64,000 nucleotides of DNA, taken from IMG/VR virus record IMGVR_UViG_3300046660_000488, positions 372,001-436,000 of that record, one strand, 5' to 3'. Numbering within the stretch: the first letter of the stretch is position 1; each line of letters opens with the position of its first letter. Below, piece by piece: positions 12,276 to 48,067 of the stretch. Below the pieces are notes generated by a model, which had not been told where the DNA came from, did no database searches, and saw only the letters and a program-made list of their open reading frames with translations. The translations under genes and the position numbers were made by a program.

Positions 12276-14555
12276 TTACACGTTGATAACCACGTTGTCA
12301 TCAACAATCGCGATGTTCGCATCGCCGCCGTTTTCCAGAGAACCGATCACGATCAACTTGGAAAGAGGCTTGGCGACATTGTCGGACAGGACGCGCTTGA
12401 GCGGTCGAGCGCCCATGAGCGGGTCGTAGCCCTTGTCGCCCAGCCAGTCCAAGGCCTCTTGCGTGAACGACAGATTGACGTTTCGCAGGGAGGCCATTTC
12501 CTGAAGCTGGCGAACGAACTTGGCCACGATGTGCAGCATGTTCGCCTTGTCCAGCCTGTCGAAGCGGATGTGGGCGTCCAGACGGTTCATGAACTCCGGG
12601 GTGAAGAACGCCTTGATCGCGGCGGTATCGCCGCCGACGTTCTCTTGCGATCCGAAACCGATCCGGTTCTTGGCCCGATCACGCGCCCCGGCATTCGAGG
12701 TCATGATCAGATGGATGTACCGGCAGTCGATGGTCTTGTTCGACGAGTCGGTGAACGAACCATTGTCCATGATCTGGAGGAAGATGTTCAGGACGTCCGG
12801 GTGAGCTTTCTCGATCTCATCCAGCAGCACCACGCAATGAGGCGTGTCGCTGACGCTCTGGGACAGCAGGCCAGCCTGATCCGAGTAGCCGACATAGCCG
12901 GGAGGGGCGCCGATCAGCCTGCTGACCGTGTGCTTCTCCATGTACTCGGACATGTCGATCCGGATGAGAGGCAGGTTGTAGACGTCCGCGAAGACCTTGG
13001 TGACTTCGGTCTTACCCACGCCGGTCGGGCCGGTGAACAGGTAGGCTCCAGCCGTCTTGTGGTTCTCACGCAGGCCAGCCTTGCTCAGGTAGATCGCGTC
13101 GATCAGGGCGGTGATCGCCGCTTCCTGCCCGAAGACGTTGGCGCGCATCTGCTCGTCGAGACGGATGATGCGTTCCTTGTCGCCCTCGGCCATTTTCTTC
13201 GGCGGGATTTTGGCGATCTGCTCAACTTCGGCCTCGATCTCTTCGACCGTGATCAGACCCTTGCGCTCGACACCTTCCTTCAGGACGTTCTGGGACGCGC
13301 CAGCGCAGTCGATCAGGTCGATGGCCTTGTCGGGCAGGAGCTTGCCGCTGATGTAACGGTGCGACAGGTCAACGGCCGCCACGAGGGCTTCGTCCGTGAA
13401 TTCGACGTTGTGGAAGGTCGAGTAATAGGGCGCGAGGCCGCGCAGGATGTCCTTGGCGTCGTCCAGCGACGGTTCGAACACATCCACCTTGCCGAATCGG
13501 CGAACGAGTGCCGTGTCCTTCTCGAAGTGCTTGTGGAACTCTGACGACGTCGTCGAGCCCATGCAGCGCAGCGTGCCCTTGGCCAGAGCAGGCTTCAGGA
13601 GGTTGGCCGCGTCCATCGTGCCGCTGTTGCCAGCCCCGGCGCCCATGATCATATGGATTTCGTCGATGAACAGGATCGACTTGGGCTTCAGTTCAAGGGC
13701 GTTGATGACTTGCTTCATCCGCTCTTCGAAATCACCGCGATAGCGAGCGCCAGCCACCAGAGCGGCCAGATCAAGCGCATAGACGGTCGAGTCCAGCAGG
13801 ATGGCCGGAACCTCGGAGCGAACGATCTTCAGGGCCAGACCTTCGGCGATGGCCGTCTTGCCAACACCCGGTTCACCCACCAGCAGCGGGTTGTTCTTCG
13901 TCCGGCGGGCGAGGATTTTGACGACGGAGTCCACTTCCTTCGTCCGGCCGATCAGCGGGTCGATGCTCTTGGTGTTGGCCCGCTCATTCAGGTTGACCGT
14001 GTAAAGCGCCAGAATGGAGTCGGCATCAGCTTCGGTCGTCGGCTTGGGCGGCGCCGTGGTCGGCTCGTCACCAGACATGATATGGCGTGCAAGACCGATG
14101 GTCGGCTTCTTGCCGTGCGACATGAAGCGCATCAGGGCCAGCGGATCGACGCCGAACTTTTGCAGGATCACGACCGCGTAACTGTCCTCCATCTTGGAGC
14201 CAGCCAGTTGCAGCAGGACATCCAGAGGGGTGACGTCAGGATCGGTGTGGGCGGCCTTCTTGCCGGTCGCGTTGAACACCAGTTCATTGGCGCGCGGGCT
14301 CGGCTCCGGCTCTTCGTCGCTGGCAGGAATGAGGCCTTCGGAGTAGAACGACTCCAACTCTTCCTGAATGCCCTCGACGTCGATCTTCATCCCTTCAAGG
14401 GCGGAGACCACATCTTCCTGCTCCAGAAGCGACGACAGCAGGTGTTCGAGGGTGATGAAAGCATGTCTGCGTTCGGTGGCGATTCGTCTAGCCCGAAGAA
14501 ACATCGCGGCTGTACGCTCAGTTTGAGCGCTATTCTCAGGCAAATCACTCATCAA
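12276..14555 (-). CDS. clpA: ATP-dependent Clp protease ATP-binding subunit ClpA
   Basis: Two AAA+ modules ([16 protein letters not shown]), [12 protein letters not shown], an IGF ClpP-docking loop and no ClpB middle domain. Confidence 0.95.
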
Positions 14556-14562
14556 AAATACC

Positions 14563-15057
14563 TTATCTACGCAATGTCTTACCTCCCGATCCTTTGGCCC
14601 TCGATAATACGAGGCGGGAGACGAGAGACACGAACGTCACCCCGTTCAGGTGGTCCGTCTCATGAAGGTAGCAGCGTGCGTCGAGATTGGCAAACATTTC
14701 GTTTACCAAATTTCCGGCCGCGTCCTGATAGCGCACCTCGGCGGTGATCGGCCGGGATACCTTCAGGAAAAGGCCGGGGAAGCTCAGGCAACCCTCATCA
14801 TCCTTGGCCTTGGTCTCGGAGACCGACAGGATTTCCGGGTTGAAGACGCCGATCTGGCGGCCGTCGCTCGTCTCCATGACGAACATGCGGTAGGGCAGGT
14901 TGACTTGCGGAGCGGCCAGACCGATGCCGCGCTCGCGCTTCATCGTAGACAGCATTTCGCCCACCAACCATTTCGGGTCGGCGGGCGGATTTTCGAAGTC
15001 GAAGGGAGGGGTGGGCTCCGACAGGATGGGGTGTGAATCGGGTACGAGGGTGAACAT
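14563..15057 (-). CDS. def: peptide deformylase
   Basis: GIGLAAPQV, EGCLSFP, HETDHLNG. Confidence 0.96.
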   Translation of the reverse strand: MFTLVPDSHPILSEPTPPFDFENPPADPKWLVGEMLSTMKRERGIGLAAPQVNLPYRMFVMETSDGRQIGVFNPEILSVSETKAKDDEGCLSFPGLFLKVSRPITAEVRYQDAAGNLVNEMFANLDARCYLHETDHLNGVTFVSLVSRLVLSRAKGSGGKTLRR

Positions 15058-15683
15058 TACAGTCTGGAGCGGATGATCTCGTGCATGACTTCGATCCCAG
15101 CGACCTTCAGGTCGTTGCAGGCTTTGGCGTCGCCCATCGAGACGATGTCGCGAAGCGAGGCGTGGATCAAGTAGGTTTCGGTGAACATCAGGCCGCGAAC
15201 CTGCGAAGCCCGCTCGTAGGAGATCATCCCCGGCGCCGTGCCCTCGCGGACAGTGATGTTGTGGCCAAGGCGGCTCATTTCGATGCCGAAGTCGCGGTTG
15301 GCCTTGATGCAGGCCTCTTGGTTGACCGGCGCGCCACGGTTCACAGCGCCACGACCCAGTTCACCGGCCTTGATCCTGTTGGAGACGTTGGCACACAATT
15401 GGGTCACGCAGCGGCTGTTGACGGCCGAGCCGACGATCTGAGCCATCTGGCTGAGGTCTTGAACGTTGGGGTCGAGGCCCTGATAGGTCGGCGAGACATA
15501 GCGCGTCTGGCCGTTGGCCATGCGCTGCTGATATTGATACTGCGGATACGGACGATCCTGCTGGCGGGTCTGCGGGCCATTGACGGCCGCCACCGCGTCG
15601 CGGGTCACGCTTGGATCGAACTGCTGGGCGTTCGCGCTCGAAGCGAACAGGACAGCGGCGATAGCAAGACCGGCGAGACGCAA
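15057..15683 (-). CDS. secreted/periplasmic hypothetical protein
   Basis: Signal peptide MRLAGLAIAAVLFASSANA; GGAGG RBS. Confidence 0.7.
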   Translation of the reverse strand: MRLAGLAIAAVLFASSANAQQFDPSVTRDAVAAVNGPQTRQQDRPYPQYQYQQRMANGQTRYVSPTYQGLDPNVQDLSQMAQIVGSAVNSRCVTQLCANVSNRIKAGELGRGAVNRGAPVNQEACIKANRDFGIEMSRLGHNITVREGTAPGMISYERASQVRGLMFTETYLIHASLRDIVSMGDAKACNDLKVAGIEVMHEIIRSRL

Positions 15684-15711
15684 GGTGACCTCCAGAGCAA
15701 TTTCGATTTGG

Positions 15712-16596
15712 CTACGTAGCAGAGTTTTGCTTCTCTTGCAAGTCTTTTACTTGCAAAAGCAGGCCTTTTTGCTCGTCCGTCAAGTCCTTGGGGACCGTGA
15801 TGTTGATGACCGCAAAGAGATCACCACGCTCACCACCGCGCTCAAGGTCCGGCAGACCGTAGCCGCTGATCCTCACCGACGACCCTGACACCTTGGTCGG
15901 AACGCCGAAATAAAGCTCTTCGCCCTCCAGCGTCACGATCTTGGCCGCGCCGCTGATCATCAGTTCAAGGGCATCCACGTCAACGCGGGCATGCAGGTTC
16001 GCGCCGTTGCGCTCGAACGCACGATGCGGCTTGACCCTTACCGTCAGGTAAAGGTCTCCAGCCTTGCCGCTCACCCAGTTCCCCATGCCCGGAACACGCA
16101 GCCGCGTACCGTGGTGAATGCCCGGTGGGATTTTCACGTTCAGGGTCTTGGCCGTTTCGAGGCCGGGATCGACCTCGATGTTCACGTTGGCCCCATTCAG
16201 TACCGAAATCAGGTCGATATCGACGGCGGCTTGCCGGTCCATCATCTGGCGACGGATGTGTTCGTCTTGGCGCCTGAAAATTTCCCGATAGCGATCCGCG
16301 AACGGGTTGTTGTCGTCGAACGCGAATTCCTGCCACCAGCCGCCCGCCGCGTCGGCGTTGCGGAAACCGTTCGGGCCATGCGGGTTCTGGCTGAAAGGGC
16401 TCGACGCCTGCTTCCACTCATTGCGCTTGGCCTGCGTGGCGATTTTCTCGTAAGCGGCTGAAATCTCTTTGAAACGAGCGTCGTCACCCCCGTTGCGATC
16501 CGGGTGATGTTCCTTGGCCAGCTTGCGGTAGGCCGACTTGATCTCGTCGTCGGTGGCGGTCTCTGCGACGCCAAGGGTGGTGAAGGGATTGCTCAT
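15712..16596 (-). CDS. dnaJ: DnaJ/CbpA-type J-domain chaperone without a Zn finger
   Basis: J-domain with HPD and a DnaJ C-terminal domain (GDLYL, GDLFA). Confidence 0.9.
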   Translation of the reverse strand: MSNPFTTLGVAETATDDEIKSAYRKLAKEHHPDRNGGDDARFKEISAAYEKIATQAKRNEWKQASSPFSQNPHGPNGFRNADAAGGWWQEFAFDDNNPFADRYREIFRRQDEHIRRQMMDRQAAVDIDLISVLNGANVNIEVDPGLETAKTLNVKIPPGIHHGTRLRVPGMGNWVSGKAGDLYLTVRVKPHRAFERNGANLHARVDVDALELMISGAAKIVTLEGEELYFGVPTKVSGSSVRISGYGLPDLERGGERGDLFAVINITVPKDLTDEQKGLLLQVKDLQEKQNSAT

Positions 16597-16731: not shown

Positions 16732-17157
16732 ATGACGAAACTGGTAAAACGGTTGGCCATCGACGCCCTGCTCGCCTACCTGTTCTATCGGTTCAGCCGC
16801 GTGGTGTTCGTCGTCGTCCTGTTTTTCGCGGCCATCTTTGGCTATGGCGTGATCAGTAGCGCGTGGTCTGATTTCCGCGCCCATGGCGGCGGCGAGCAAA
16901 TCGACCCTGCAACGGCCGCTTCATTCAGCTACAACACCGACGTCAACAACAGCCAAGTGAACTGGACCTTCCGCAACACGTCGGATCGCGTTTTGGGTTC
17001 GGTCGAGATTGCATGCGTGGCCAATGGCACGGAGACCCTGTTCTTGGCGGGCGACTATGTCGCTCCGGGCCAAGAGGTCAGCGGCGCCAAATACAACTCG
17101 ACCTTCGGCTATGACACGCGGTGTCACCTCGCCGATGCGAGACTGTACGACAAGTGA
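16732..17157 (+). CDS. membrane-anchored hypothetical protein
   Basis: AGGAG RBS, hydrophobic N-terminus, beta-rich C-terminal domain. Confidence 0.7.
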   Translation: MTKLVKRLAIDALLAYLFYRFSRVVFVVVLFFAAIFGYGVISSAWSDFRAHGGGEQIDPATAASFSYNTDVNNSQVNWTFRNTSDRVLGSVEIACVANGTETLFLAGDYVAPGQEVSGAKYNSTFGYDTRCHLADARLYDK

Positions 17158-17160
17158 CTG

Positions 17161-17860
17161 ATCAGGCGGGCTTGCCCGCCTGATGGTTTGGATGACACAC
17201 TCGCTATCGCTCGCTGGCTGTCATCCAAACCGATTTGACTGTCCTTCCTTGAGACAGTTTCTTTCCTTGTATCCTAGATTTATGTTGCATTTCTCTCCCC
17301 CTACCACAAGCAATCCCCCGTAAAGGGGGACTGACTTGCGGTAAAGGGAGAAGTGCAGACGATCCTGAGTTCGTAGTTGCTCAACCCGTGGCGTACCGCG
17401 TCTATAGCGGGGCTGGCGGTTCTCCTGTACCAGCTTGTTGCACACGTTATCTCGATCCGACCCACCTGAAGGTGGTCGAGTTGCGTCTTGACCGGTGGAT
17501 GTGCCTTTCGGCGCTTTCATCCCCGAGACGTGCTTGACGGGTGGTCGTGTGTGATCTGAACGGTTATGGCTCCCTCTCGGGGCCAATCTTACAGACCTCG
17601 CCGGTTGAGAGACGGGTCCGCACGGATAGTTGTCAAACGCGAGACATAGCTATCCTCTTTCATAAAAAGCCTTTCGTGGACCAAATTCTGGTTCACCAAG
17701 CGGCTGTGACGGGATATGCTCGCCGTGGGGCTTTCACCCGCGTGGCAATCCGACCTACTTGTTCGGTGCGCTCCTGACGTTCCGGTCCGTTGATCCCGGT
17801 TGGTCGGTTGGGCTGGGCTACCCGATACTTACTGCCCTGCGCGTATAGCTGTAAGTTGGA
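17161..17860 (+). ncRNA. candidate large structured non-coding RNA (or structured origin region)
   Basis: No credible ORF; at least ten hairpins and a multibranch junction; G.U pairs consistently on the + strand. Confidence 0.55.
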
Positions 17861-17877
17861 CAATAGAATCATAACGT

Positions 17878-18318
17878 GTGCTGAGTCAAAATGAATCGGT
17901 GGTTGCATTGAACTTAGATGTTTGGCGGTTCCAAGATGACCGGCTGGTCATGGTGCTGACGCCGATCAATTCGGACGGCGGCAATGATCGTGCGATTTAC
18001 ACGCCGGGCACTCCAGAATCCGAAGCGTTCAAGTTGCTGCGCGATGACACGATGTCGAAAAGGCATACCATCCTCTTGGTGGCCGACTGCATCGTTGAGG
18101 GTATTTTCAAGTTCAGTCTTTTCAAGACGGTGGCGCCATGGACGCCGGACGCGGACGTCAGGCTGCGCGAGAATTCGATCCTGACCGAATTCTTCGAAAG
18201 ATGCCCGGCGACCCGCATGGAGAAAATGCAGCACGTTCCGGGTGTTGACGCTTCGACTGAATTGAACATCTACATCCGGATAGAAGACCTGATGTTCCTG
18301 CGGATGATGTACTCATGA
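17878..18318 (+). CDS. paralogue family protein 1
   Basis: ENSILTEFFERCPATR...YIRIEDLMFLRMMYS. Confidence 0.75.
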   Translation: MLSQNESVVALNLDVWRFQDDRLVMVLTPINSDGGNDRAIYTPGTPESEAFKLLRDDTMSKRHTILLVADCIVEGIFKFSLFKTVAPWTPDADVRLRENSILTEFFERCPATRMEKMQHVPGVDASTELNIYIRIEDLMFLRMMYS

Positions 18319-18731
18319 AACTCGACGTCTGGAGTTTTCACGAAGGACTGCTGAACCTCGTCATCACGCCGATGCCCAAGGGCGTCAGCCATAGTTTGGC
18401 AGACGGACGTCGCACATGGCCGCCATCGACGTCGGCGTGGTGTATCGCGTTCAATAAATTCCAAGCCGACGCCCGCAAAGATAACCGCGCCATCACCCTC
18501 GTGACCGTGACCATCGAGGACGGCGTGTACGAATTCGCCGTGGCCAATATGGCGGAGCCTCGCTCGGGCTGGGCGATCCAGAACAACTCCATGCTGTCGG
18601 AATTCTTCGAGCGATGCCCGGCGGCTCGAACCAAGGTCGTGAACCTTCACCCTGACATTGCGGACGCCACCCGGACGCTGGTCTACATCCGGCAAGAAGA
18701 CTTGATGTTCCTGCGGATGCTCTACGCATGA
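18315..18731 (+). CDS. paralogue family protein 2
   Basis: NNSMLSEFFERCPAAR...YIRQEDLMFLRMLYA. Confidence 0.8.
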   Translation: MKLDVWSFHEGLLNLVITPMPKGVSHSLADGRRTWPPSTSAWCIAFNKFQADARKDNRAITLVTVTIEDGVYEFAVANMAEPRSGWAIQNNSMLSEFFERCPAARTKVVNLHPDIADATRTLVYIRQEDLMFLRMLYA

Positions 18732-19156
18732 CCAGCAAGCCTGCGACGCTCTGGACCCTGTTCGGTGGAAAGTTGGTTCTCGCGGTCAGGCCTGAAGGCT
18801 GGGGCGGCGTCCTCACGTTCGTGATCGGCAACGACAAGAGAGACGAATGTCGGTTGTTGTTCAAGCAGGAACCGACGCCAAGGGGTTCGCCATATGTCTT
18901 CAAGCTATGGTACGGGGCGCGCCACCAAGGTGACCCCGATTTGCGCGGCGTTGAGTATGTCAAATATGTGCTTGATGATTTCCTAGCGGTGTGCCCACGG
19001 TCTCGCGTTTACGAAGTGAAGCCGGAGCCCGTGCCATCGGTCCCCAACCAGCATGGCTTTCTGCCGGTTGGGCCGAATTGGAACGACCAGTCTATCGGGA
19101 CCTTCCTCGAAGTGGCGACTCTGGCCGACCTGACTGTCCTTCGGATGATGGACTAA
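18728..19156 (+). CDS. paralogue family protein 3 (diverged)
   Basis: VLDDFLAVCPRSR...ADLTVLRMMD. Confidence 0.7.
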   Translation: MTSKPATLWTLFGGKLVLAVRPEGWGGVLTFVIGNDKRDECRLLFKQEPTPRGSPYVFKLWYGARHQGDPDLRGVEYVKYVLDDFLAVCPRSRVYEVKPEPVPSVPNQHGFLPVGPNWNDQSIGTFLEVATLADLTVLRMMD

Positions 19157-19208: not shown

Positions 19209-19385
19209 ATGGCTAAAATTCAAGAAGAACTGGTGGTGATCCGCCTGAGCCGTCTCGTCAAGGACGATCAGAAACTGAGCGCCACCATCACGGGTGAAGA
19301 CTTCATCCCGAGCATGGAAGCCGTCGTGGCTGAACTGGCTGGCGCTGGCGTGCTGGTCGAAGTCGAGCGGGCGCCCACAGAGTGA
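19209..19385 (+). CDS. small late protein of 58 aa (MAKIQEELVVIRLSRLVKD...), absent from the ORF track
   Basis: TAAATA at 19169-19174, AGGAG RBS, strong codon bias. Confidence 0.75.
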   Translation: MAKIQEELVVIRLSRLVKDDQKLSATITGEDFIPSMEAVVAELAGAGVLVEVERAPTE

Positions 19386-19585
19386 TCCGCAGGTCACCCA
19401 CCGTCTATAGTCTGGAAGGCCTGATCAAAACGGTGACGGGTCCAGATCAGTCCCAAACGGGCCTTCCGGACGGACGGTGGGTTCCCACACGGCCAGTTCG
19501 TCTAGGAGGCTTACGGGAACGCCTCTATGCCGGATGGCTTGTCTTTTCGGGTCGAGCGGACGCGGTTGAATGGCCGGGCCAGTGA
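19382..19585 (+). CDS. hypothetical phage protein
   Basis: GTGA coupling; WVPTRP...RLYAGWLVFSGRADAV. Confidence 0.6.
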   Translation: MIRRSPTVYSLEGLIKTVTGPDQSQTGLPDGRWVPTRPVRLGGLRERLYAGWLVFSGRADAVEWPGQ

Positions 19586-21032: not shown

Positions 21033-21440
21033 ATGAGCCGGAAGAGTGTCTTGATCATCAGCACCAGCACGCGGGCTGAAGAGATCGACGTGACGGGAAA
21101 TCCGGTGAGGATCGACAATCTATACTCGTCCTCCGAGTATATGATGACCTTTGCTATTGCATCCAGTGCTTTCATGGGCCGCGTTGTGCTTGAGGGTTCC
21201 ATTATGAACTCTCCGGGCGAGAACGACTGGGCGACGATCTATCTGACCCCGGAAGGATTCATCGACTACCCCAAGACCGGTCAGCAAGGTCGCGAGACGT
21301 CCACTTTGGGCTTCACCGTCAAGGGCCGGTACACGTGGGTTCGAGCAAAAGTGCTGCGATCCCACCTCATTTCGACAGTAGCAACAAGCCTTCAGGTAGC
21401 AACGTACGGCGCTATCGACCGCATTTTGCTCAACCTCTAA
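21033..21440 (+). CDS. late, probably virion, protein
   Basis: TAAATA at 21000; GRYTWVRAKV beta-sandwich pattern. Confidence 0.65.
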   Translation: MSRKSVLIISTSTRAEEIDVTGNPVRIDNLYSSSEYMMTFAIASSAFMGRVVLEGSIMNSPGENDWATIYLTPEGFIDYPKTGQQGRETSTLGFTVKGRYTWVRAKVLRSHLISTVATSLQVATYGAIDRILLNL

Positions 21441-21500
21441 GAATTCAGTCCCAACTGTCCTTGGAGTCATAAATAACCAGAATATTTGGGGAGTTATACA

Positions 21501-23423
21501 ATGCCTTCAGTTGGTAGCAGCCGCGTCAAGACGTCCGGCCGTGGTGAGATCGAGTACTCGCAGGATTCTGCAACAAGCAATGGCGCGACGACCGCTGCTG
21601 TTTCGACCCCTGTTGATGAGCCGATCCTGTCGGTTGTCGGCGAGAACGTCGGTGGTGGCCTTGGCCTCTTCAACGGCGTCAACGGCTCCGACCATGTGGT
21701 CATGGAGTTCAAGACCCTCAAGGCAGGCGCGGGCATCGCGATTGTCAACGACGGTCTGTCCCTGACCATCCGCGCCACCGGCAATGCGACCGGCAACGGC
21801 GGCACGATCATCGGCGACGGCTTCGACATCCAGCTTGGCGACATCGCCAACAAGGGTGACGGCTCGTGGGCGCCGGGCGCCGTGGACCTGACGGACTCGA
21901 CCCCGATGTCCGAAGCCATCGACGAGATCAACGAACTGCTCGGCCTGTTGATCCCCGCAGCCCCGCCCGCTTTCCCCAACGGCACGCTGACGATCATCAA
22001 CACCGCTGGCAACTCGCCGCGTCTGGCCGCTGGCTTCACCAGCCACGTCACGGGTCAGGGCACGCCGGTCGCGGGCGATGCTGTCGCGCGCATCACGACC
22101 ACGGGCGTCAGCACCAACACCCTCAACGACGTCGGCCCGGCTAACCGTGGCAAGATTCAGCTTCTGCTGAACGACGGTTTCGTCGGCGAGCGCACGCTGA
22201 CGGAGAACAGCGACAACGGCAACTACGGCGGCCTGATCATTTCCGACGAGAAGGACTTCCCGGTCGATAAGCCCGGTTTCTGGAAGTCGCTCGACGTTGC
22301 TGGCACGGCCGTCCCGGTCGCCCAAGGCCTCAACAAGGTCCGCATCAACCACACCAACGCTGGCACGACGGCCAACACGCTGTTCGTCCGCGACGACATG
22401 ACGGCTTCGCCGTCCATCCCGACTGGCTCGGTTGCTCTCCAGACGCTGGGTACAGTCGCCTATTCGTCGGGCATCCCGCACTTCGGCCAAGGCGGCGTCC
22501 TGACGGTTGGCGGCTCGATCACCAATCTGGCTGGCCAGACCTACTACGGCGGCAACGATCCGCTGACGATCACCGGCACGAACACGGTCACGACGGCTCA
22601 AGCCTTCAGCTACACTTCGCTCGGCATCACCACCCCGATCCCGGCACAGACGACGTCTGCGACCGCGACGACCGGCGTGGCTGTCAGCATCGACGGCACG
22701 ACCCATTCGTCGGGCGTCATCCAAGCCGTGGCCAAGAACGTCAACGGACAAACGGCTCCGACGACGCTGTCGCAGTCGATCATTCTGGTCAAGCGCGGCG
22801 TCGCCGCCTCGAACCGTCTGGACGAACTGAACGTCCCGGTCATCAATCTGGGCACGGTCCCCAACGCCAATTACGCCACGCGCACTCTGATCGCCGCCAA
22901 CGCCGACCGTCCGGCTGGCGCTACGGCCAACTGGGACGCCACGGCGGCTCTGGCCAGCTACGAAGCCGCAGTCTGGGCTGGCGCTCTGGGTCACTGCCAA
23001 GTCGATTTCACCAGCGGTTACCTGCCGCAGGGTCCGAATTACTCGCAGGGCCGCAGCGGCGCTCAGTACGCGACCTTCACGTTCAACCGCGCCTCGGTCT
23101 CCAATTTCCGCATCAACGTCGTCGGCACGTACGCAGGAGTTTGGGTGAAGCTTCCGGGCGTCTCCGACAACTCGGCGATCTCTCCGAACGCCACGAACGG
23201 CTGGTGGGACGCCACCAAGGCTTACGCCGGTGCTGGTGTCCCCGGCAACTCGTCGGACTCGCTGGCTGGCTGCGTCGTCGGCACGCCGATGGGCGGAACT
23301 TCCGGCGCCTATCAGATCACTTTTGGTCCTCAGTCTTCGACGAACGCGACCTCGAACCAGATCATTGTCCGTATTCGTCTGAACGCTGGGCAAGTCATTA
23401 CTTCGCTCAATTTCTCTAACTAA
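21501..23423 (+). CDS. virion fibre/appendage-associated protein A
   Basis: Late motif at 21470; Gly/Thr/Asn-rich; paralogue of 41334-43148. Confidence 0.7.
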   Translation: MPSVGSSRVKTSGRGEIEYSQDSATSNGATTAAVSTPVDEPILSVVGENVGGGLGLFNGVNGSDHVVMEFKTLKAGAGIAIVNDGLSLTIRATGNATGNGGTIIGDGFDIQLGDIANKGDGSWAPGAVDLTDSTPMSEAIDEINELLGLLIPAAPPAFPNGTLTIINTAGNSPRLAAGFTSHVTGQGTPVAGDAVARITTTGVSTNTLNDVGPANRGKIQLLLNDGFVGERTLTENSDNGNYGGLIISDEKDFPVDKPGFWKSLDVAGTAVPVAQGLNKVRINHTNAGTTANTLFVRDDMTASPSIPTGSVALQTLGTVAYSSGIPHFGQGGVLTVGGSITNLAGQTYYGGNDPLTITGTNTVTTAQAFSYTSLGITTPIPAQTTSATATTGVAVSIDGTTHSSGVIQAVAKNVNGQTAPTTLSQSIILVKRGVAASNRLDELNVPVINLGTVPNANYATRTLIAANADRPAGATANWDATAALASYEAAVWAGALGHCQVDFTSGYLPQGPNYSQGRSGAQYATFTFNRASVSNFRINVVGTYAGVWVKLPGVSDNSAISPNATNGWWDATKAYAGAGVPGNSSDSLAGCVVGTPMGGTSGAYQITFGPQSSTNATSNQIIVRIRLNAGQVITSLNFSN

Positions 23424-33238: not shown

Positions 33239-34568
33239 CGAGAAGGAACAAATCCTCACCGCCGCATTTATGGATGGTGAACGAGATTTTTTCACTGCTG
33301 CAAAACTGGCATACGACATTCTGGTCACCTTCGGCGTCAAGAAGGTCGCCGAGATCGATCCGGAAGCTGAAGACGTAGGCGGCGACTATTCGTTCGTGGA
33401 TTTCCTGTCGCTGGCCGCCAAGTTGCGCGCCCGTGAACTGACGGGTCACGCGGCGCGCGACGCGATCCACGAGGCCGCCAACCGCAGCAACGTGAAGACG
33501 TGGAACACGTTCTACCGCCGCATCCTGCTGAAGGATTTCAAGTGCGGCGTGGACACCTCCACGATCAACAAGGTGCTCAAGGCCATCGCCAAGAGCACGC
33601 ACCTCGCGGAAGCGTCCGACTTCATCATCCCGGTGTTCTCGTGCCAGTTGGCCAAGGACGGCGCCGATCCGGACAACGCCAAGCACGTGACCGGCCGCAA
33701 GATGCTGGACATCAAGCTGGACGGCGTCCGTCTGCTGACCGTGCTCGACAAAGAGCAGGGCACGATCACCCAGTACACCCGCAACGGCAAGGTCAACGAG
33801 AATTTCACGGAAATCCGTGAGAGCCTTCAGGCCATGATGGACTACCTGCCGGGCTCGGTGGTTATCGACGGTGAAGTCGTCGCCAAGTCGTTCCAAGACC
33901 TGATGCGTCACGTCAACCGTCGCACGGATGTGGACACGTCTGCCGCCCGGCTGGCCGTGTTCGACATGATCCCGCTGGAAGACTTCCGCGCGGGCATCTG
34001 CACGACGCCGCAGGAAATCCGCCACACGGTTCTGGCCGATCTGGACGCCGAAGGCTTGTTCAAGAAATTCACCAACGGCATCGTCTACGTGATCCCCAAG
34101 GTGACCGTCGATCTGGACACGGTCGAGGGCCAAAAGACCTACGCCGAGTTCAACAAGGCCGCCATCGAAGCGGGCTACGAGGGCGTGATGCTGAAGGACC
34201 CGGACGCGCCGTACGAGACGCGCCGCACCAAGGCGTGGCTGAAGGTCAAGCCGTTCATCGAAGTCAGCCTAACCGTGGTTGGCGTCGAGGTCGGCAAGGA
34301 AGACGGCAAGCGCAAGGGCCTGCTGGGCGCCATCGTCTGTGAGGGCTACGACGACGGCAAGTTCATCAAGTCCAATGTCGGGAGCGGATTCACCGATGCT
34401 CAGGTCAAGGAATACTGGGAAGACCAGTCCTTGGTCATGGGCATGGTGGTCGAGATTCGCGCCGACTGTCTGACCCAAGACGAGGACAGCACCGGCACGA
34501 ACAATTACTCGCTGCGGTTCCCGCGATTCAAGGGCTTCCGGGGTACGGTTCCGGGTGAAAAGCTCTAA
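33186..34568 (+). CDS. lig: ATP-dependent DNA ligase
   Basis: KLDGVR, DGEV, EGVMLK, WLKVKP, SLRFPRF. Confidence 0.95.
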   Translation: MTNTVQIIEALEATTKRNEKEQILTAAFMDGERDFFTAAKLAYDILVTFGVKKVAEIDPEAEDVGGDYSFVDFLSLAAKLRARELTGHAARDAIHEAANRSNVKTWNTFYRRILLKDFKCGVDTSTINKVLKAIAKSTHLAEASDFIIPVFSCQLAKDGADPDNAKHVTGRKMLDIKLDGVRLLTVLDKEQGTITQYTRNGKVNENFTEIRESLQAMMDYLPGSVVIDGEVVAKSFQDLMRHVNRRTDVDTSAARLAVFDMIPLEDFRAGICTTPQEIRHTVLADLDAEGLFKKFTNGIVYVIPKVTVDLDTVEGQKTYAEFNKAAIEAGYEGVMLKDPDAPYETRRTKAWLKVKPFIEVSLTVVGVEVGKEDGKRKGLLGAIVCEGYDDGKFIKSNVGSGFTDAQVKEYWEDQSLVMGMVVEIRADCLTQDEDSTGTNNYSLRFPRFKGFRGTVPGEKL

Positions 34569-34593
34569 CCACACTAGCAGAGAGCGGGGGCTG

Positions 34594-34980
34594 ATGACGC
34601 GCATCACCCCCGCGTTCGACACGCTTGCGTGCGGCTTCGTGCTACGGGACCGCCTGAACAAGATCGGCTATGAGCACTGGTCGCATTTTCTGCCCCGAGA
34701 ATGGACTATCGACCAGTCGCCGCCCTACGCGGTTGTGGTATCCGGCAATCTGTATGAAGCCGAAGAAGTGCTCGTGCGGAACAACGTAGTCCTGAAACCA
34801 TGGACAGCGATCAATTACCAGTGGGAGGTACGGCCCGACATCCAGTTCACGGTCAACGGCGTTCCGCAAGGGCCTGTGAGCTATTTGGATAAGGTAGCGA
34901 TCATCGCATCCAACTTGGAAGACCTCACCAAAATACGACTTTTCACCGACCTCAGCTTTGTTGAAATGCCATATAAATAG
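34594..34980 (+). CDS. hypothetical protein
   Basis: ORF between ligase and hydrolase with a C-terminal EDLTKIRLF motif. Confidence 0.6.
   Translation: MTRITPAFDTLACGFVLRDRLNKIGYEHWSHFLPREWTIDQSPPYAVVVSGNLYEAEEVLVRNNVVLKPWTAINYQWEVRPDIQFTVNGVPQGPVSYLDKVAIIASNLEDLTKIRLFTDLSFVEMPYK
34972..34979 (+). promoter_or_regulatory. T4-type late promoter TATAAATA (core TAAATA recurs at about 19 sites)
   Basis: TAAATA on + at 19169, 21000, 21470, 28719, 32272, 34974, 50099, 50178, 53675, 56876, 61061, 63213 and on - at 3762, 5253, 5965, 16656, 36954, 43176, 44700, each upstream of a gene in GC-rich DNA. Confidence 0.85.
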
Positions 34981-44400: not shown

Positions 44401-44695
44401 AGGGGGAGCTTTCTGTTGACAGGCAAGCCCCGAAGGACCGGCTCCCTAACCCCGGAACCATCACCGCTTACGCGGCGACAGCGTAGTCCATGGCAACGTT
44501 GTCGTTGGCATTTACAATTGTGAACTGATCGTCGGCCGTGTCTTGCCGGATATCTCGCAAACCCTTTACCGCCGCGAATCGATGCTGGTCACCCCCACTT
44601 AGAAACCCATCGCGGACGATGGGCTTGTATGGTGGAGGTGCGGGGAATCGCACCCCGGTCTTCATCGGCTTATTACAGTCTGGTCATCAATATCG
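44401..44695 (-). ncRNA. ssrA: circularly permuted (two-piece) tmRNA with tag ANDNVAMDYAVAA
   Basis: Acceptor piece ends CCGGGG-TGCGATT-CCCCG-CACCTCCACCA at 44630; 33-nt intervening hairpin; coding piece starts GGGGGTGA at 44596; G3.U70 pair; tag stop at 44468. Confidence 0.93.
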
Positions 44696-44730
44696 TCTGT
44701 ATTTAAGCATGGTTTACCAAATGGCACAAG

Positions 44731-45192
44731 CTAAATCGAATTCTCGTCCATTTTGGTGATCCGCTTGGCGGCCAAGGACTTTTTGCGTTCCTTTTCCGAC
44801 TGGTGCGCGCGGTACACAATGCACGGACCCATCCAGCCATATGGCCCCACGAACAGTGCGGTGATCAGCCACCAGTCTTGGTTTTTAACGAACCACGGGA
44901 TGTGGTGCGTGACCGTCAGCATGCCCAGCGTACCGAAGAACACGAGCAGCAGAAAAGTCGGGCCGAACGTGATGATCTCAGACCTGATCCACCGGCGCCG
45001 AGCATCTTGTTCGTCCGGGGTCACCAGCAGACCAAGCTCGTCTTCCAGCATGGCCTGTCGTTCGGCCATCGCGCAGACCTTCTTGAACCAGTGGCGGTCG
45101 TTGATGCCAATGGGGCACGGTCCGGTCTCCGGCGTCCACGAGACGAAATCGGCGACGATCTTCTGAGCCCGGTCGGCCACCACGGGTTTCAT
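44731..45192 (-). CDS. membrane protein
   Basis: Two hydrophobic segments; ATGA overlap with serS. Confidence 0.65.
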   Translation of the reverse strand: MKPVVADRAQKIVADFVSWTPETGPCPIGINDRHWFKKVCAMAERQAMLEDELGLLVTPDEQDARRRWIRSEIITFGPTFLLLVFFGTLGMLTVTHHIPWFVKNQDWWLITALFVGPYGWMGPCIVYRAHQSEKERKKSLAAKRITKMDENSI

Positions 45193-46845: not shown

Positions 46846-47795
46846 TTCAGGCCGACCAGCCAAGCGGCATCGTGCGAAATCCGGGTGTCGAAGATCGAGA
46901 ATTCCGTGATGGTCTTGGGGACCTCGAAGCCGATGCCACGCAGTTGGGTCGCGATGTTCTCACAGCTTCCCTTGAACCTTTCGTACGTGCCGTCGTATTT
47001 CCGGTAGGTGACCATCATGACGTAGGTGTCGTCGCTGATTTTCTTGAAGGCATTCCGTGAGACGTGGGCGTCGAGATCGTAGGCGGCGGCGCGAAGGCCT
47101 TCGATCCGGTCGTCGCTGACCACCACGTTGAAGTGGGCCTCAAAATAGCACGCCGGGGGCATCGCCTGACGACTGTGGCTATTGGACGGAGCCGCCGGAT
47201 GCCACGGAACAGTCTCGATTTTCTGGCGGGCCACGTTATAGCCGCGTTCGACCAGATCATCCTTGATCCGGCTCACTTCAAGGAACGCCGAGCGGTTGTC
47301 GCCCATGTGGACCGACGAGGTCTGGGCGTCGAGCATAACGGTCTCGCCATGTTGGTTGTGCAGGTCGATCAGCAGCGGCTTGACGCCGATCTCCGCGCAG
47401 TCGGCCTTGTACTGCTCGATGTTCAGGCCACCCTCGCCCGGCGAGACGGTGACGTGGATTTCGTAGGGGAGCGGGTAGGTGACGTCGCGCTCGCGGGTCT
47501 GAAGTTCGTCCCAGTACTGGGCCTTCTTCATCATCATCGACCCGATGTCGTCGTGGCTGTAGCCCAACTGGTAGGCGACACTCAGCGCGCAGAGGATGAC
47601 GTCGGCCGTCTCTTCAAGGATGCGCTCGGAGGTGACGAACCGGTGGGTCGTGGTCGGCACGTTGTCGAAGGGCAGGACGGCCTTGGCCAGTTCGCCGACT
47701 TCTTCAGCCGTCTTCAGGGCCTTTTCGGTCAGGGTCTTCTTATCCTTGGCGGACAGCGCGGCGATATAGTCGAAAATCTCGGGTTTCATGACCAC
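46842..47795 (-). CDS. MazG pyrophosphohydrolase fused to a C-terminal domain
   Basis: KTAEEVGELA...EETADV; C-terminal YEIHVTV, RQKIETVPWHP, YFEAH. Confidence 0.8.
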   Translation of the reverse strand: MVMKPEIFDYIAALSAKDKKTLTEKALKTAEEVGELAKAVLPFDNVPTTTHRFVTSERILEETADVILCALSVAYQLGYSHDDIGSMMMKKAQYWDELQTRERDVTYPLPYEIHVTVSPGEGGLNIEQYKADCAEIGVKPLLIDLHNQHGETVMLDAQTSSVHMGDNRSAFLEVSRIKDDLVERGYNVARQKIETVPWHPAAPSNSHSRQAMPPACYFEAHFNVVVSDDRIEGLRAAAYDLDAHVSRNAFKKISDDTYVMMVTYRKYDGTYERFKGSCENIATQLRGIGFEVPKTITEFSIFDTRISHDAAWLVGLK

Positions 47796-48067
47796 CTCAA
47801 TTTGAAAAGTGTGAATTTACTCAAATCGTCTGAACTGAATTCAATAGTTGTGTCTTGCATCATGCGAAACTGGTCTGTGTACGTATAGTACACTGCATGA
47901 TACTTGAAGTTGTTCTCTTCGGACCATTCTTTGAATTCTTCGGTGAGTTCAAGCTTGACGCCGAGTTCTGTCGTAATGGACAGGCCATTGGCGCGATGAA
48001 CCGGAGCGGCAACCAGCGTCGCTACGTCCGGGCCAACTTTCATCCTGAATTTTCCGCGAACGCTCAT
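47786..48067 (-). CDS. hypothetical protein with a C-terminal F.LRW motif
   Basis: IEFSSDDLSKFTLFKLRWS. Confidence 0.6.
   Translation of the reverse strand: MSVRGKFRMKVGPDVATLVAAPVHRANGLSITTELGVKLELTEEFKEWSEENNFKYHAVYYTYTDQFRMMQDTTIEFSSDDLSKFTLFKLRWS

What the first reader, a model, noticed from the sequence alone, without database searches (positions are those of the whole stretch)
17878..19156. Three tandem paralogues directly downstream of the structured region: possible RNA-protein module
Seen in sequence: three ~140-aa genes joined by ATGA overlaps share an N-terminal W.F....L..V.TP pattern, a central (E/D)F(F/L)..CP..R and a C-terminal (E/A)DL..LRM. Genes 1 and 2 share near-identical DNA near their 3' ends (TACATCCGG...GAAGAC.TGATGTTCCTGCGGATG), while their middle segments diverge. 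Inference: a duplicated family with a variable centre, which could be the protein partners of the upstream RNA or a diversified anti-host array. A looser version of the C-terminal motif occurs at 34594-34980 and 47786-48067.
Basis: partly seen in the sequence, partly recalled or inferred. Interest (0 to 1): 0.6.

Follow-up and report, generated by a model that had tools for sequence, protein, structure and literature searches.

The report
Orphan phage gene triplet behind RNA
Three small back-to-back genes of a 578-kb giant phage are real, fast-evolving genes with no detectable relatives anywhere, and they are probably not dedicated partners of the large folded RNA just upstream, because that RNA recurs at least about 30 times elsewhere in front of unrelated genes or none.

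Summary
The three ORFs exist as described: g1 17878/17908-18318, g2 18315-18731, g3 18728-19156, joined by ATGA overlaps. Their codon-position GC matches real genes of this genome. g1 and g2 are clear paralogues (BLASTP 2e-26, 35% identity). g3 is tied to them only by three short colinear motifs, so it is a likely but unproven third paralogue.

No relatives were found in Pfam, PHROGs, NCBIfam, PADLOC or PDB sequences. A 5.8-billion-protein word search and a 1.84-billion-representative HMMER search returned only the genes themselves. Both AlphaFold models are poor (pLDDT 50), so the fold is unknown.

The window belongs to a complete 578,292-bp relative of phiCbK-like Caulobacter/Brevundimonas phages. 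Two related phages have one unrelated-looking 129-131-aa gene in the same slot.

The upstream region is a real structured RNA of about 630 nt with strong covariation and no Rfam match. It has four copies in this genome, each before a different gene. It also occurs in soil metagenomes and in mobile elements of Alphaproteobacteria, always without this protein family. A dedicated RNA-protein module is therefore not supported. A lineage-specific accessory gene array is the best reading, but its function is untested. The two "looser motif" sites are noise.

The parts
17266..17897 (+). One of four genomic copies of a structured RNA element of about 630 nt. It forms the upstream boundary of the cassette, and its conserved 3' block overlaps the nominal GTG start of g1.
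   Evidence: Covariance model R1 matches 17266-17455 at 167.8 bits. Seven full-length copies give 100 predicted pairs, 53 with compensatory changes. Across 19 copies, 84% of cells are paired against at most 47.5% in slid controls. No Rfam match. Codon-position GC is flat.
17891..17911 (+). Six-codon mini-ORF (MNRWLH) starting at the ATG inside the RNA's conserved 3' block. Its TGA stop overlaps the TTG 17908 start of g1 (a TTGA overlap). A possible coupling device; this is inference only.
   Evidence: Read directly from the sequence. The ATG-containing block is conserved in the window, L003, L056 and L008 copies; the other three own-genome copies (c97, c218, c538) keep only part of it and lack the ATG.
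17908..18318 (+). g1, 136 aa from TTG 17908 (146 aa if read from GTG 17878). Paralogue of g2.
   Evidence: ORF. BLASTP to g2 2e-26. GC1/2/3 = 0.52/0.38/0.73. GGTGG lies 5 nt upstream of the TTG. An existing gene call starts later, at M25 (P0003), which would cut the conserved N-terminal motif.
18315..18731 (+). g2, 138 aa. Its ATG overlaps the g1 stop (ATGA).
   Evidence: GC3 0.78. Searches return only itself.
18728..19156 (+). g3, 142 aa. Its ATG overlaps the g2 stop (ATGA). A probable, highly diverged third paralogue.
   Evidence: GC3 0.72. Searches return only itself.
19209..19385 (+). 58-aa acidic gene with its own AGGAG ribosome-binding site. It is the positionally conserved last gene of the cassette. 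Similar 'MAQIQ...' genes of 55-60 aa follow the slot in L003 and L056.
   Evidence: No family or phage match. The similarity is seen by eye at the N-terminus; BLASTP does not detect it.
16732..17157 (+). 141-aa gene for a predicted membrane protein that precedes the RNA in the window. Genes of similar size and character sit at the same position in L003, L004 and L050.
   Evidence: No Pfam or PHROG match. Not detected by BLASTP against L003, so the correspondence is positional.

Best explanation
g1-g3 are a lineage-specific tandem array of small soluble proteins.

Shown:
- Two genes are clear duplicates and the third is a probable older duplicate.
- The genes overlap by ATGA, and the family has no detectable relatives.
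- The array fills a variable accessory-gene slot of a 578-kb phiCbK-like giant phage. The slot lies between one copy of a portable structured RNA of about 630 nt and a conserved 58-aa gene. Two related phages hold a single, sequence-unrelated 129-131-aa gene in that slot.
- The RNA is a generic element of alphaproteobacterial phages and mobile elements. It is not a partner specific to these proteins.

Inferred:
- The genes are transcribed as one unit with, or just behind, the RNA and are translated by coupling.
- The conserved N-terminal, CP and C-terminal blocks hold a common alpha/beta fold, or a self-association surface. The two divergent middle segments carry specificity.
- The array acts on host or competitor targets (takeover or counter-defence) rather than in the virion or on the RNA.
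For: - Real genes: codon-position GC matches bona fide genes, and the antisense ORFs are shadows.
- Duplication: g1-g2 at 2e-26. g3 is the only ORF of 6,199 with three colinear motif hits.
- Coupling: ATGA overlaps, and the same TTCCTGCGGATG stretch lies 9-20 nt before both downstream starts.
- Orphan status: Pfam, PHROGs, NCBIfam, PADLOC and PDB all blank. The word search returned only self. The exhaustive HMMER search returned only self plus two repeat-protein artefacts. No tblastn match in phages, and none in IMG/VR.
- Variable slot: L003 and L056 share the gene order around it, but with one 129-131-aa gene that HMMER does not relate to g1-g3.
- Generic RNA.
- Not virion: two reverse-strand genes separate the cassette from the structural block that starts at 21033. 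The family is not found in phage Colossus, phage Papperlapapp or the G001 contig.
Against: - No direct evidence of function, expression or operon structure.
- The fold is unknown: AF2 pLDDT 50.6 and 50.0, and fold searches gave nothing.
- Homology of g3 is statistically weak.
- hhalign gives a weak colinear match between g1-g3 and the slot genes of L003/L056 (E 0.0085, probability 4.7%). The slot may therefore hold one very fast-evolving family rather than replaced genes.
- All known instances of g1-g3 and their positional counterparts lie behind the same RNA subtype, so a functional link to that RNA is not excluded.
Confidence: 0.5

Rival explanations
1. RNA-protein module: g1-g3 bind, chaperone or process the upstream RNA (possibly all four genomic copies) as a ribonucleoprotein.
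For: g1 starts immediately after the RNA, and the RNA's conserved 3' block overlaps its start region. The positional counterparts in L003 and L056 also follow the same RNA subtype. g1 has a sub-threshold hit to the RNA-binding ANTAR domain (E 0.12, 12.6 bits against a cut-off of 27.3).
Against: The RNA occurs in at least 30 places without any member of the family. These include three more copies in this genome and copies in bacterial mobile elements. The genes next to other copies are unrelated. pI is 5.0-6.8, not basic. The ANTAR hit is below threshold and absent from g2 and g3.
Confidence: 0.1
2. Only g1 and g2 are paralogues. g3 is an unrelated small gene whose three short motifs are chance, or reflect constraints of translational coupling.
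For: g2-g3 gives no BLASTP alignment, and g1-g3 gives E 0.009 over 33 residues. The shuffle z-scores are 2.0 and -0.5. The g1+g2 profile gives g3 E = 36, rank 54.
Against: The three motif hits are colinear and sit at the matching positions (N-terminus, about two-thirds along, C-terminus). That pattern is unique among 6,199 ORFs. g3 also has the same length, the same operon and the same ATGA coupling. The low-confidence models show the same N-terminal hairpin and the same C-terminal helix-strand-strand-helix order.
Confidence: 0.25
3. Virion neck or tail-completion proteins, duplicated, belonging to the structural block just downstream.
For: Sizes of about 140 aa. The structural and tail genes start at 21033 and 21486. 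The ESM Atlas model of g3 (pLDDT 0.57) aligns at TM about 0.45 with viral hypothetical proteins and with a PF11367 tail-completion gp17 cluster.
Against: No Pfam or PHROG match at all. TM is below 0.5 on a poor model. Foldseek against viral and PDB structures found nothing. Two reverse-strand genes separate the array from the structural block. The family was not found in phages Colossus or Papperlapapp, nor in the related 415-kb contig (72% complete by CheckV), which share the tail genes. Essential virion parts would not be lineage-specific orphans.
Confidence: 0.07
4. The ORFs are not genes (chance open frames in GC-rich DNA).
For: None, beyond the absence of homologues.
Against: Gene-like GC1/2/3 in all three, against flat or shadow patterns in the other frames. 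g1 and g2 are conserved at protein level with 18 of 49 identical residues encoded by different codons. The stop/start overlaps are precise.
Confidence: 0.02

Closest known systems
Clusters of small, fast-evolving accessory genes in phage genomes, such as anti-defence (anti-CRISPR-type) loci marked by a conserved neighbouring small gene (comparison from general knowledge)
   Same: Small (about 140 aa) proteins without relatives. Tandem duplication with divergent segments. They occupy a slot whose content differs between related phages while the flanks keep their order. A small conserved gene follows the slot.
   Different: No homology to any known member. The 58-aa neighbour has no recognisable DNA-binding domain. 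No inhibition of any host system has been shown. The cassette starts with a large structured RNA, which is not a feature of those loci.
ROOL and GOLLD: large structured RNAs of phages and prophages, in Rfam (comparison for the upstream RNA)
   Same: More than 500 nt, multi-helix, well supported by covariation, carried by phages and mobile elements, function unknown.
   Different: No covariance-model match to these or to any of the 4,227 Rfam 15 families, even at E <= 1. Restricted so far to Alphaproteobacteria and their phages. Up to four diverged copies per genome. In phages it sits 0-130 nt before an ORF.
Tail completion protein gp17 family (PF11367)
   Same: Similar length. A weak structural resemblance of the Atlas model of g3 (TM about 0.45).
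   Different: No profile match. Not in the structural operon. Not conserved in related phages.
ANTAR RNA-binding domain (PF03861)
   Same: A 28-residue stretch of g1 aligns to the second half of the domain (E 0.12).
   Different: The score is 12.6 bits against a cut-off of 27.3. It covers only half the domain and is absent from g2 and g3. Treated as chance.

Membership tests
g1/g2/g3 paralogue family (defined here) | Significant pairwise or profile similarity between members | tested here: inconclusive
   g1-g2 is met (2e-26). For g3: E 0.009 to g1, nothing to g2, hhalign E 0.012 over 16 columns, profile rank 54.
g1/g2/g3 paralogue family (defined here) | Three colinear motifs (N-terminal W..hairpin..P, central F..CP..R, C-terminal DL..LRM) in a protein of about 140 aa | tested here: met
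   Present in all three. g3 is the only one of 6,199 genomic ORFs with three colinear profile hits.
g1/g2/g3 paralogue family (defined here) | Membership of the 'looser motif' ORFs at 34555-34980 and 47786-48067(-) | tested here: not met
   Profile E = 140 and 360, ranks 192 and 718.
g1/g2/g3 paralogue family (defined here) | Membership of the positional counterparts L003:7765-8151 and L056:1581-1973(-) | tested here: inconclusive
   HMMER ranks 555 and 734 of 8,076. hhalign E 0.0085 and probability 4.7%, but colinear over 64 columns. At this distance even the flanking small genes escape BLASTP.
Dedicated RNA-protein module | RNA and protein family co-occur across genomes | tested here: not met
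   The RNA is found in at least 30 places. The protein family is found only here.
Dedicated RNA-protein module | Protein carries an RNA-binding domain or a basic surface | tested here: not met
   No domain. The ANTAR hit is sub-threshold. pI 5.0, 6.8 and 6.7.
Dedicated RNA-protein module | Co-transcription and physical binding | not testable with these tools
Tail completion gp17 (PF11367) / neck proteins | Profile match at or above Pfam's cut-off | tested here: not met
   No hit at E <= 1 for any of the three. PHROGs gives only noise.
Tail completion gp17 (PF11367) / neck proteins | Same fold | tested here: inconclusive
   Atlas TM about 0.45 on a pLDDT-0.57 model. The AF2 models have pLDDT 50, and Foldseek found nothing at E <= 0.001.
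Known Rfam RNA families (for the upstream element) | Covariance-model match at the gathering score | tested here: not met
   Nothing over the element in the window or in eight other copies, also at E <= 1 for five of the nine.
Phage anti-defence / host-takeover gene arrays | Descriptive traits: small, fast-evolving, duplicated, in a slot whose content varies between relatives | tested here: met
Phage anti-defence / host-takeover gene arrays | Inhibition of a host system, or homology to a known inhibitor | not testable with these tools
   No anti-defence library was on hand. PADLOC (defence proteins) is blank.

The most novel reading that the evidence does not exclude
The upstream element is a new class of large (about 630 nt) structured RNA, carried in several diverged copies by alphaproteobacterial giant phages and mobile elements. 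In phages it would act as a portable cis module. The start region of whatever gene follows (here g1, with a six-codon mini-ORF and a TTGA overlap) lies in or just after its conserved 3' block. The RNA's fold would then gate translation or stability of the g1-g3 cassette.
Probability: 0.25. Interest if true: 0.7.

Novelty: new member of a known kind. Interest (0 to 1): 0.38.

Why it matters
On their own, the three genes add one more orphan paralogue array to the large pool of unknown giant-phage genes. That is useful for annotation but not surprising.

Checking them gave two results that matter more:
- It removes a tempting but unsupported 'RNA plus its proteins' story.
- It shows that the neighbouring structured region belongs to an undescribed family of large folded RNAs, with strong covariation support. 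The family has four copies in this phage and is scattered through Alphaproteobacteria on mobile elements. Large structured RNA classes are rare, and several known ones still lack a function. A class with many diverged copies and varied neighbouring genes is a good experimental handle.

Tried and rejected
- Family scans of g1-g3 in Pfam, PHROGs, NCBIfam and PADLOC: nothing above noise.
- PDB sequence profile search: nothing.
- Word-index search with g2 and g3: only self. With the L003/L056 pair: only themselves.
- Exhaustive HMMER profile search: self plus two long repeat proteins (P0004, P0005), judged artefacts of repeats matching short motifs.
- tblastn against 50,697 phage records: no match. 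IMG/VR pattern scan: 100 pattern hits, none confirmed. Whole-record searches of phage Colossus, phage Papperlapapp and the 415-kb contig: none.
- AlphaFold2 of g1 (3-row alignment) and g3 (5-row alignment): pLDDT 50.6 and 50.0, unusable. Foldseek with them against viral and PDB libraries: no match at E <= 0.001.
- ESM Atlas look-alikes: weak leads only, all TM by query <= 0.55 on poor models (pLDDT 0.43 and 0.57). The tail-completion lead was not upheld.
- Gene conversion at the g1/g2 3' ends: 11 of 13 identical residues use identical codons there, against 20 of 36 elsewhere. This is suggestive only. Protein conservation, codon bias and the embedded start region of the next gene explain it equally well.
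- Promoter and terminator consensus scan of 16.5-20.5 kb: no more sites than in shuffles, uninformative.
A 176-position model of the 5' domain was used instead.
- Two literature searches found no description of the RNA or of the protein family.

Full report
**What is there.**
- The window is bases 372001-436000 of a single 578,292-bp virus record. The record has direct terminal repeats, is rated complete, and has 59% GC.
- The tail protein at 21486-23423 is 54-56% identical to proteins of phiCbK-like giant siphoviruses of Caulobacter and Brevundimonas (Dolichocephalovirinae). Those genomes are 205-357 kb.
- The window also carries ClpB-like, peptide deformylase and DnaJ genes and an alphaproteobacterial tmRNA.
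- This is therefore an unusually large relative of that phage group, with an alphaproteobacterial host.

**The observation.**
- Three same-strand ORFs lie at 17878-18318, 18315-18731 and 18728-19156. Their stops and starts overlap by ATGA.
- All three show the codon-position GC pattern of real genes in this genome (GC3 0.72-0.78, GC2 0.38-0.44). The antisense ORFs and the upstream non-coding stretch do not.
- The DNA of g1 and g2 is 75-86% identical over the EFFERCP block and the last ~12-16 codons, and 31-56% identical in between.
- The conserved 3' ends also hold the same TTCCTGCGGATG stretch 9-20 nt before the next start codon. Nucleotide conservation there may serve translational coupling as well as the protein.

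**Are they three paralogues?**
- g1 and g2 certainly are (BLASTP 2e-26, 35% identity, shuffle z = 36).
- g3 is not significantly similar by any standard score:
  - E 0.009 to g1 over 33 residues, and nothing to g2;
  - hhalign E 0.012 over 16 columns;
  - rank 54 of 6,199 ORFs with a g1+g2 profile.
- However, HMMER places three separate hits in g3 in the right order and at the right places. g3 is the only ORF in the genome with such a pattern (a post hoc test).
- Adding equal length, adjacency and the same overlap arrangement, I put the chance that g3 is a diverged paralogue at about 0.7.
- The two 'looser motif' ORFs elsewhere in the window score at noise.

**The start of g1.**
- The first ten codons of the 146-aa reading are the conserved 3' end of the upstream RNA.
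- The same nucleotide block closes a second copy of the RNA in a related phage, where it is followed by a stop after five codons and then an unrelated gene. A partial form of the block closes copies elsewhere in this genome.
- TTG 17908 gives MNLDVW, matching g2's MKLDVW, and has GGTGG 5 nt upstream.
- An ATG inside the conserved block opens a six-codon frame whose TGA overlaps that TTG. This is noted as a possible coupling device and is not shown.

**Relatives.**
- None were found:
  - four family libraries and PDB sequences;
  - the word search;
  - tblastn against phage records;
  - IMG/VR;
  - an exhaustive HMMER search of 1.84 billion cluster representatives. That search returned the three genes plus two long repeat proteins, which I judge spurious.
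- No further copy exists in the 578-kb genome.
- With such shallow alignments, AlphaFold2 gave pLDDT 50 for g1 and g3. Fold searches were empty.
- The low-confidence models and the ESM Atlas suggest a small alpha/beta protein. A tail-completion-like resemblance of g3 (TM about 0.45) is not backed by any profile match or by gene order.

**Synteny.**
- A 415-kb IMG/VR contig (L003) and a second lineage (L004/L056) share the local gene order:
  - ClpB, deformylase and DnaJ on the reverse strand;
  - a small membrane-protein gene;
  - a non-coding stretch of about 640-730 nt;
  - one gene of 129-131 aa;
  - a 55-60-aa 'MAQIQ' gene;
  - two reverse-strand genes;
  - then the structural genes.
- Core proteins are 28-56% identical to the window's.
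- The single slot gene is 45% identical between those two lineages. HMMER does not relate it to g1-g3. hhalign gives a weak colinear match (E 0.0085, probability 4.7%).
- At this distance even the flanking small genes escape BLASTP. I cannot tell whether the slot holds one very fast-evolving family, triplicated in this phage, or unrelated genes.

**The upstream RNA.**
- The non-coding stretch is better conserved than its neighbours. The two-sequence alignment is 75% identical by column, against 28-56% amino-acid identity for the flanking proteins.
- A covariance model of its first 176 positions finds four full-length copies in this genome, at 389266(+), 97519(-), 218421(-) and 538821(+). It finds two in the 415-kb contig and one in L004/L056, and none in phages Colossus or Papperlapapp.
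- A degenerate 23-nt hairpin pattern plus the model recovers further copies:
  - in soil and other metagenome contigs;
  - in genome assemblies of Microvirga, Azospirillum, Chthonobacter, Dongia and Caulobacteraceae.
- In one genus it was found in 6 of 41 genomes searched, once in two copies. The copies sit beside integrase or resolvase genes. This is the sporadic pattern of a mobile-element cargo.
- Covariation is strong:
  - across 19 distinct copies, 84% of cells are paired against at most 47.5% when partners are slid, with 43 double-change cells against at most 7;
  - seven full-length copies give 100 predicted pairs, 53 with compensatory changes, including an invariant helix joining the 5' and 3' ends.
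- No Rfam 15 family matches, even at E <= 1.

**What this means for the interpretation.**
- In the phage copies an ORF on the same strand starts 0-130 nt after the RNA, but it belongs to a different family each time:
  - g1;
  - a 173-184-aa protein with a DMDxT motif (no Pfam match);
  - a 182-aa unknown;
  - an outer-membrane beta-barrel protein;
  - an RNase H-like exonuclease.
- In two bacterial copies the next gene converges on the RNA.
- None of these places encodes a relative of g1-g3. The three proteins are acidic to neutral.
- The RNA is thus a generic, portable element, and g1-g3 are one of its many neighbours. A dedicated RNA-protein partnership is not supported.
- A cis effect of the RNA on expression of the cassette, or a trans role of the proteins on all copies, cannot be excluded without experiments.

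**Most likely account.**
- Shown: a real, translationally overlapping gene array without relatives, made by duplication, in a slot whose content differs between related phages.
- Inferred:
  - one transcription unit running from the RNA to the 58-aa gene, ending where it meets the convergent reverse-strand genes;
  - conserved blocks that hold the fold or a self-association surface, and variable segments that carry specificity;
  - an accessory role towards the host or competitors.
- I give this composite account about 0.5. Most of the doubt is on the functional part.

**Limits.**

Noticed in passing
window 17266-17897 (+); other copies at G000 97519(-), 218421(-), 538821(+); L003:7147-7790; L008:1423-2075; L056:1955-2580(-): A structured RNA family of about 630 nt with no Rfam match. 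It has 100 predicted pairs, 53 with compensatory changes, and a closing helix between its 5' and 3' ends. There are four diverged copies in this phage, each before a different gene. This is the most interesting object in the neighbourhood.
   Followed up: yes
L070 (Microvirga sp. VF16 chromosome), L087 (Azospirillum brasilense), L093 (Chthonobacter), L095 (Dongia), L071, L073, L079: The same RNA occurs in alphaproteobacterial genome assemblies next to integrase or resolvase genes. In one genus it was found in 6 of 41 genomes searched. This sporadic distribution suggests prophage or island cargo rather than a housekeeping RNA.
   Followed up: partly
window 17891-17911 (+): A six-codon mini-ORF (MNRWLH) starts at the ATG inside the RNA's conserved 3' block. 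Its stop overlaps the likely TTG start of g1 (TTGA), mirroring the ATGA overlaps further on.
   Followed up: no
window 44402-44738 (-): A phage-borne alphaproteobacterial (permuted, two-piece type) tmRNA gene, scoring 114-122 bits against Rfam RF01849 and RF04321.
   Followed up: no
window 12276-16596 (-): A chaperone and protein-maturation cluster on the reverse strand: a ClpB-like double AAA+ ATPase (759 aa), peptide deformylase (164 aa), a 208-aa unknown and DnaJ (294 aa). ClpB, deformylase and DnaJ recur in the same order in the related 415-kb contig; the 208-aa gene has no match there.
   Followed up: partly
whole record G000 (578,292 bp, direct terminal repeats): The genome is about 220 kb larger than the largest phiCbK-like phage records that matched its tail protein (205-357 kb). 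It appears to be a megaphage-sized member of that lineage.
   Followed up: no
window 19209-19385 (+); L003:8189-8371; L056:1377-1544(-): A small acidic protein (55-60 aa, 'MA(K/Q)IQ...') always follows the variable slot. It has no family match and could serve as a marker gene for this cassette.
   Followed up: partly
window 19382-19585 (+): A 67-aa ORF that overlaps the end of the convergent reverse-strand gene. Its codon-position GC is flat (0.69/0.57/0.57), so it is probably not a gene.
   Followed up: no
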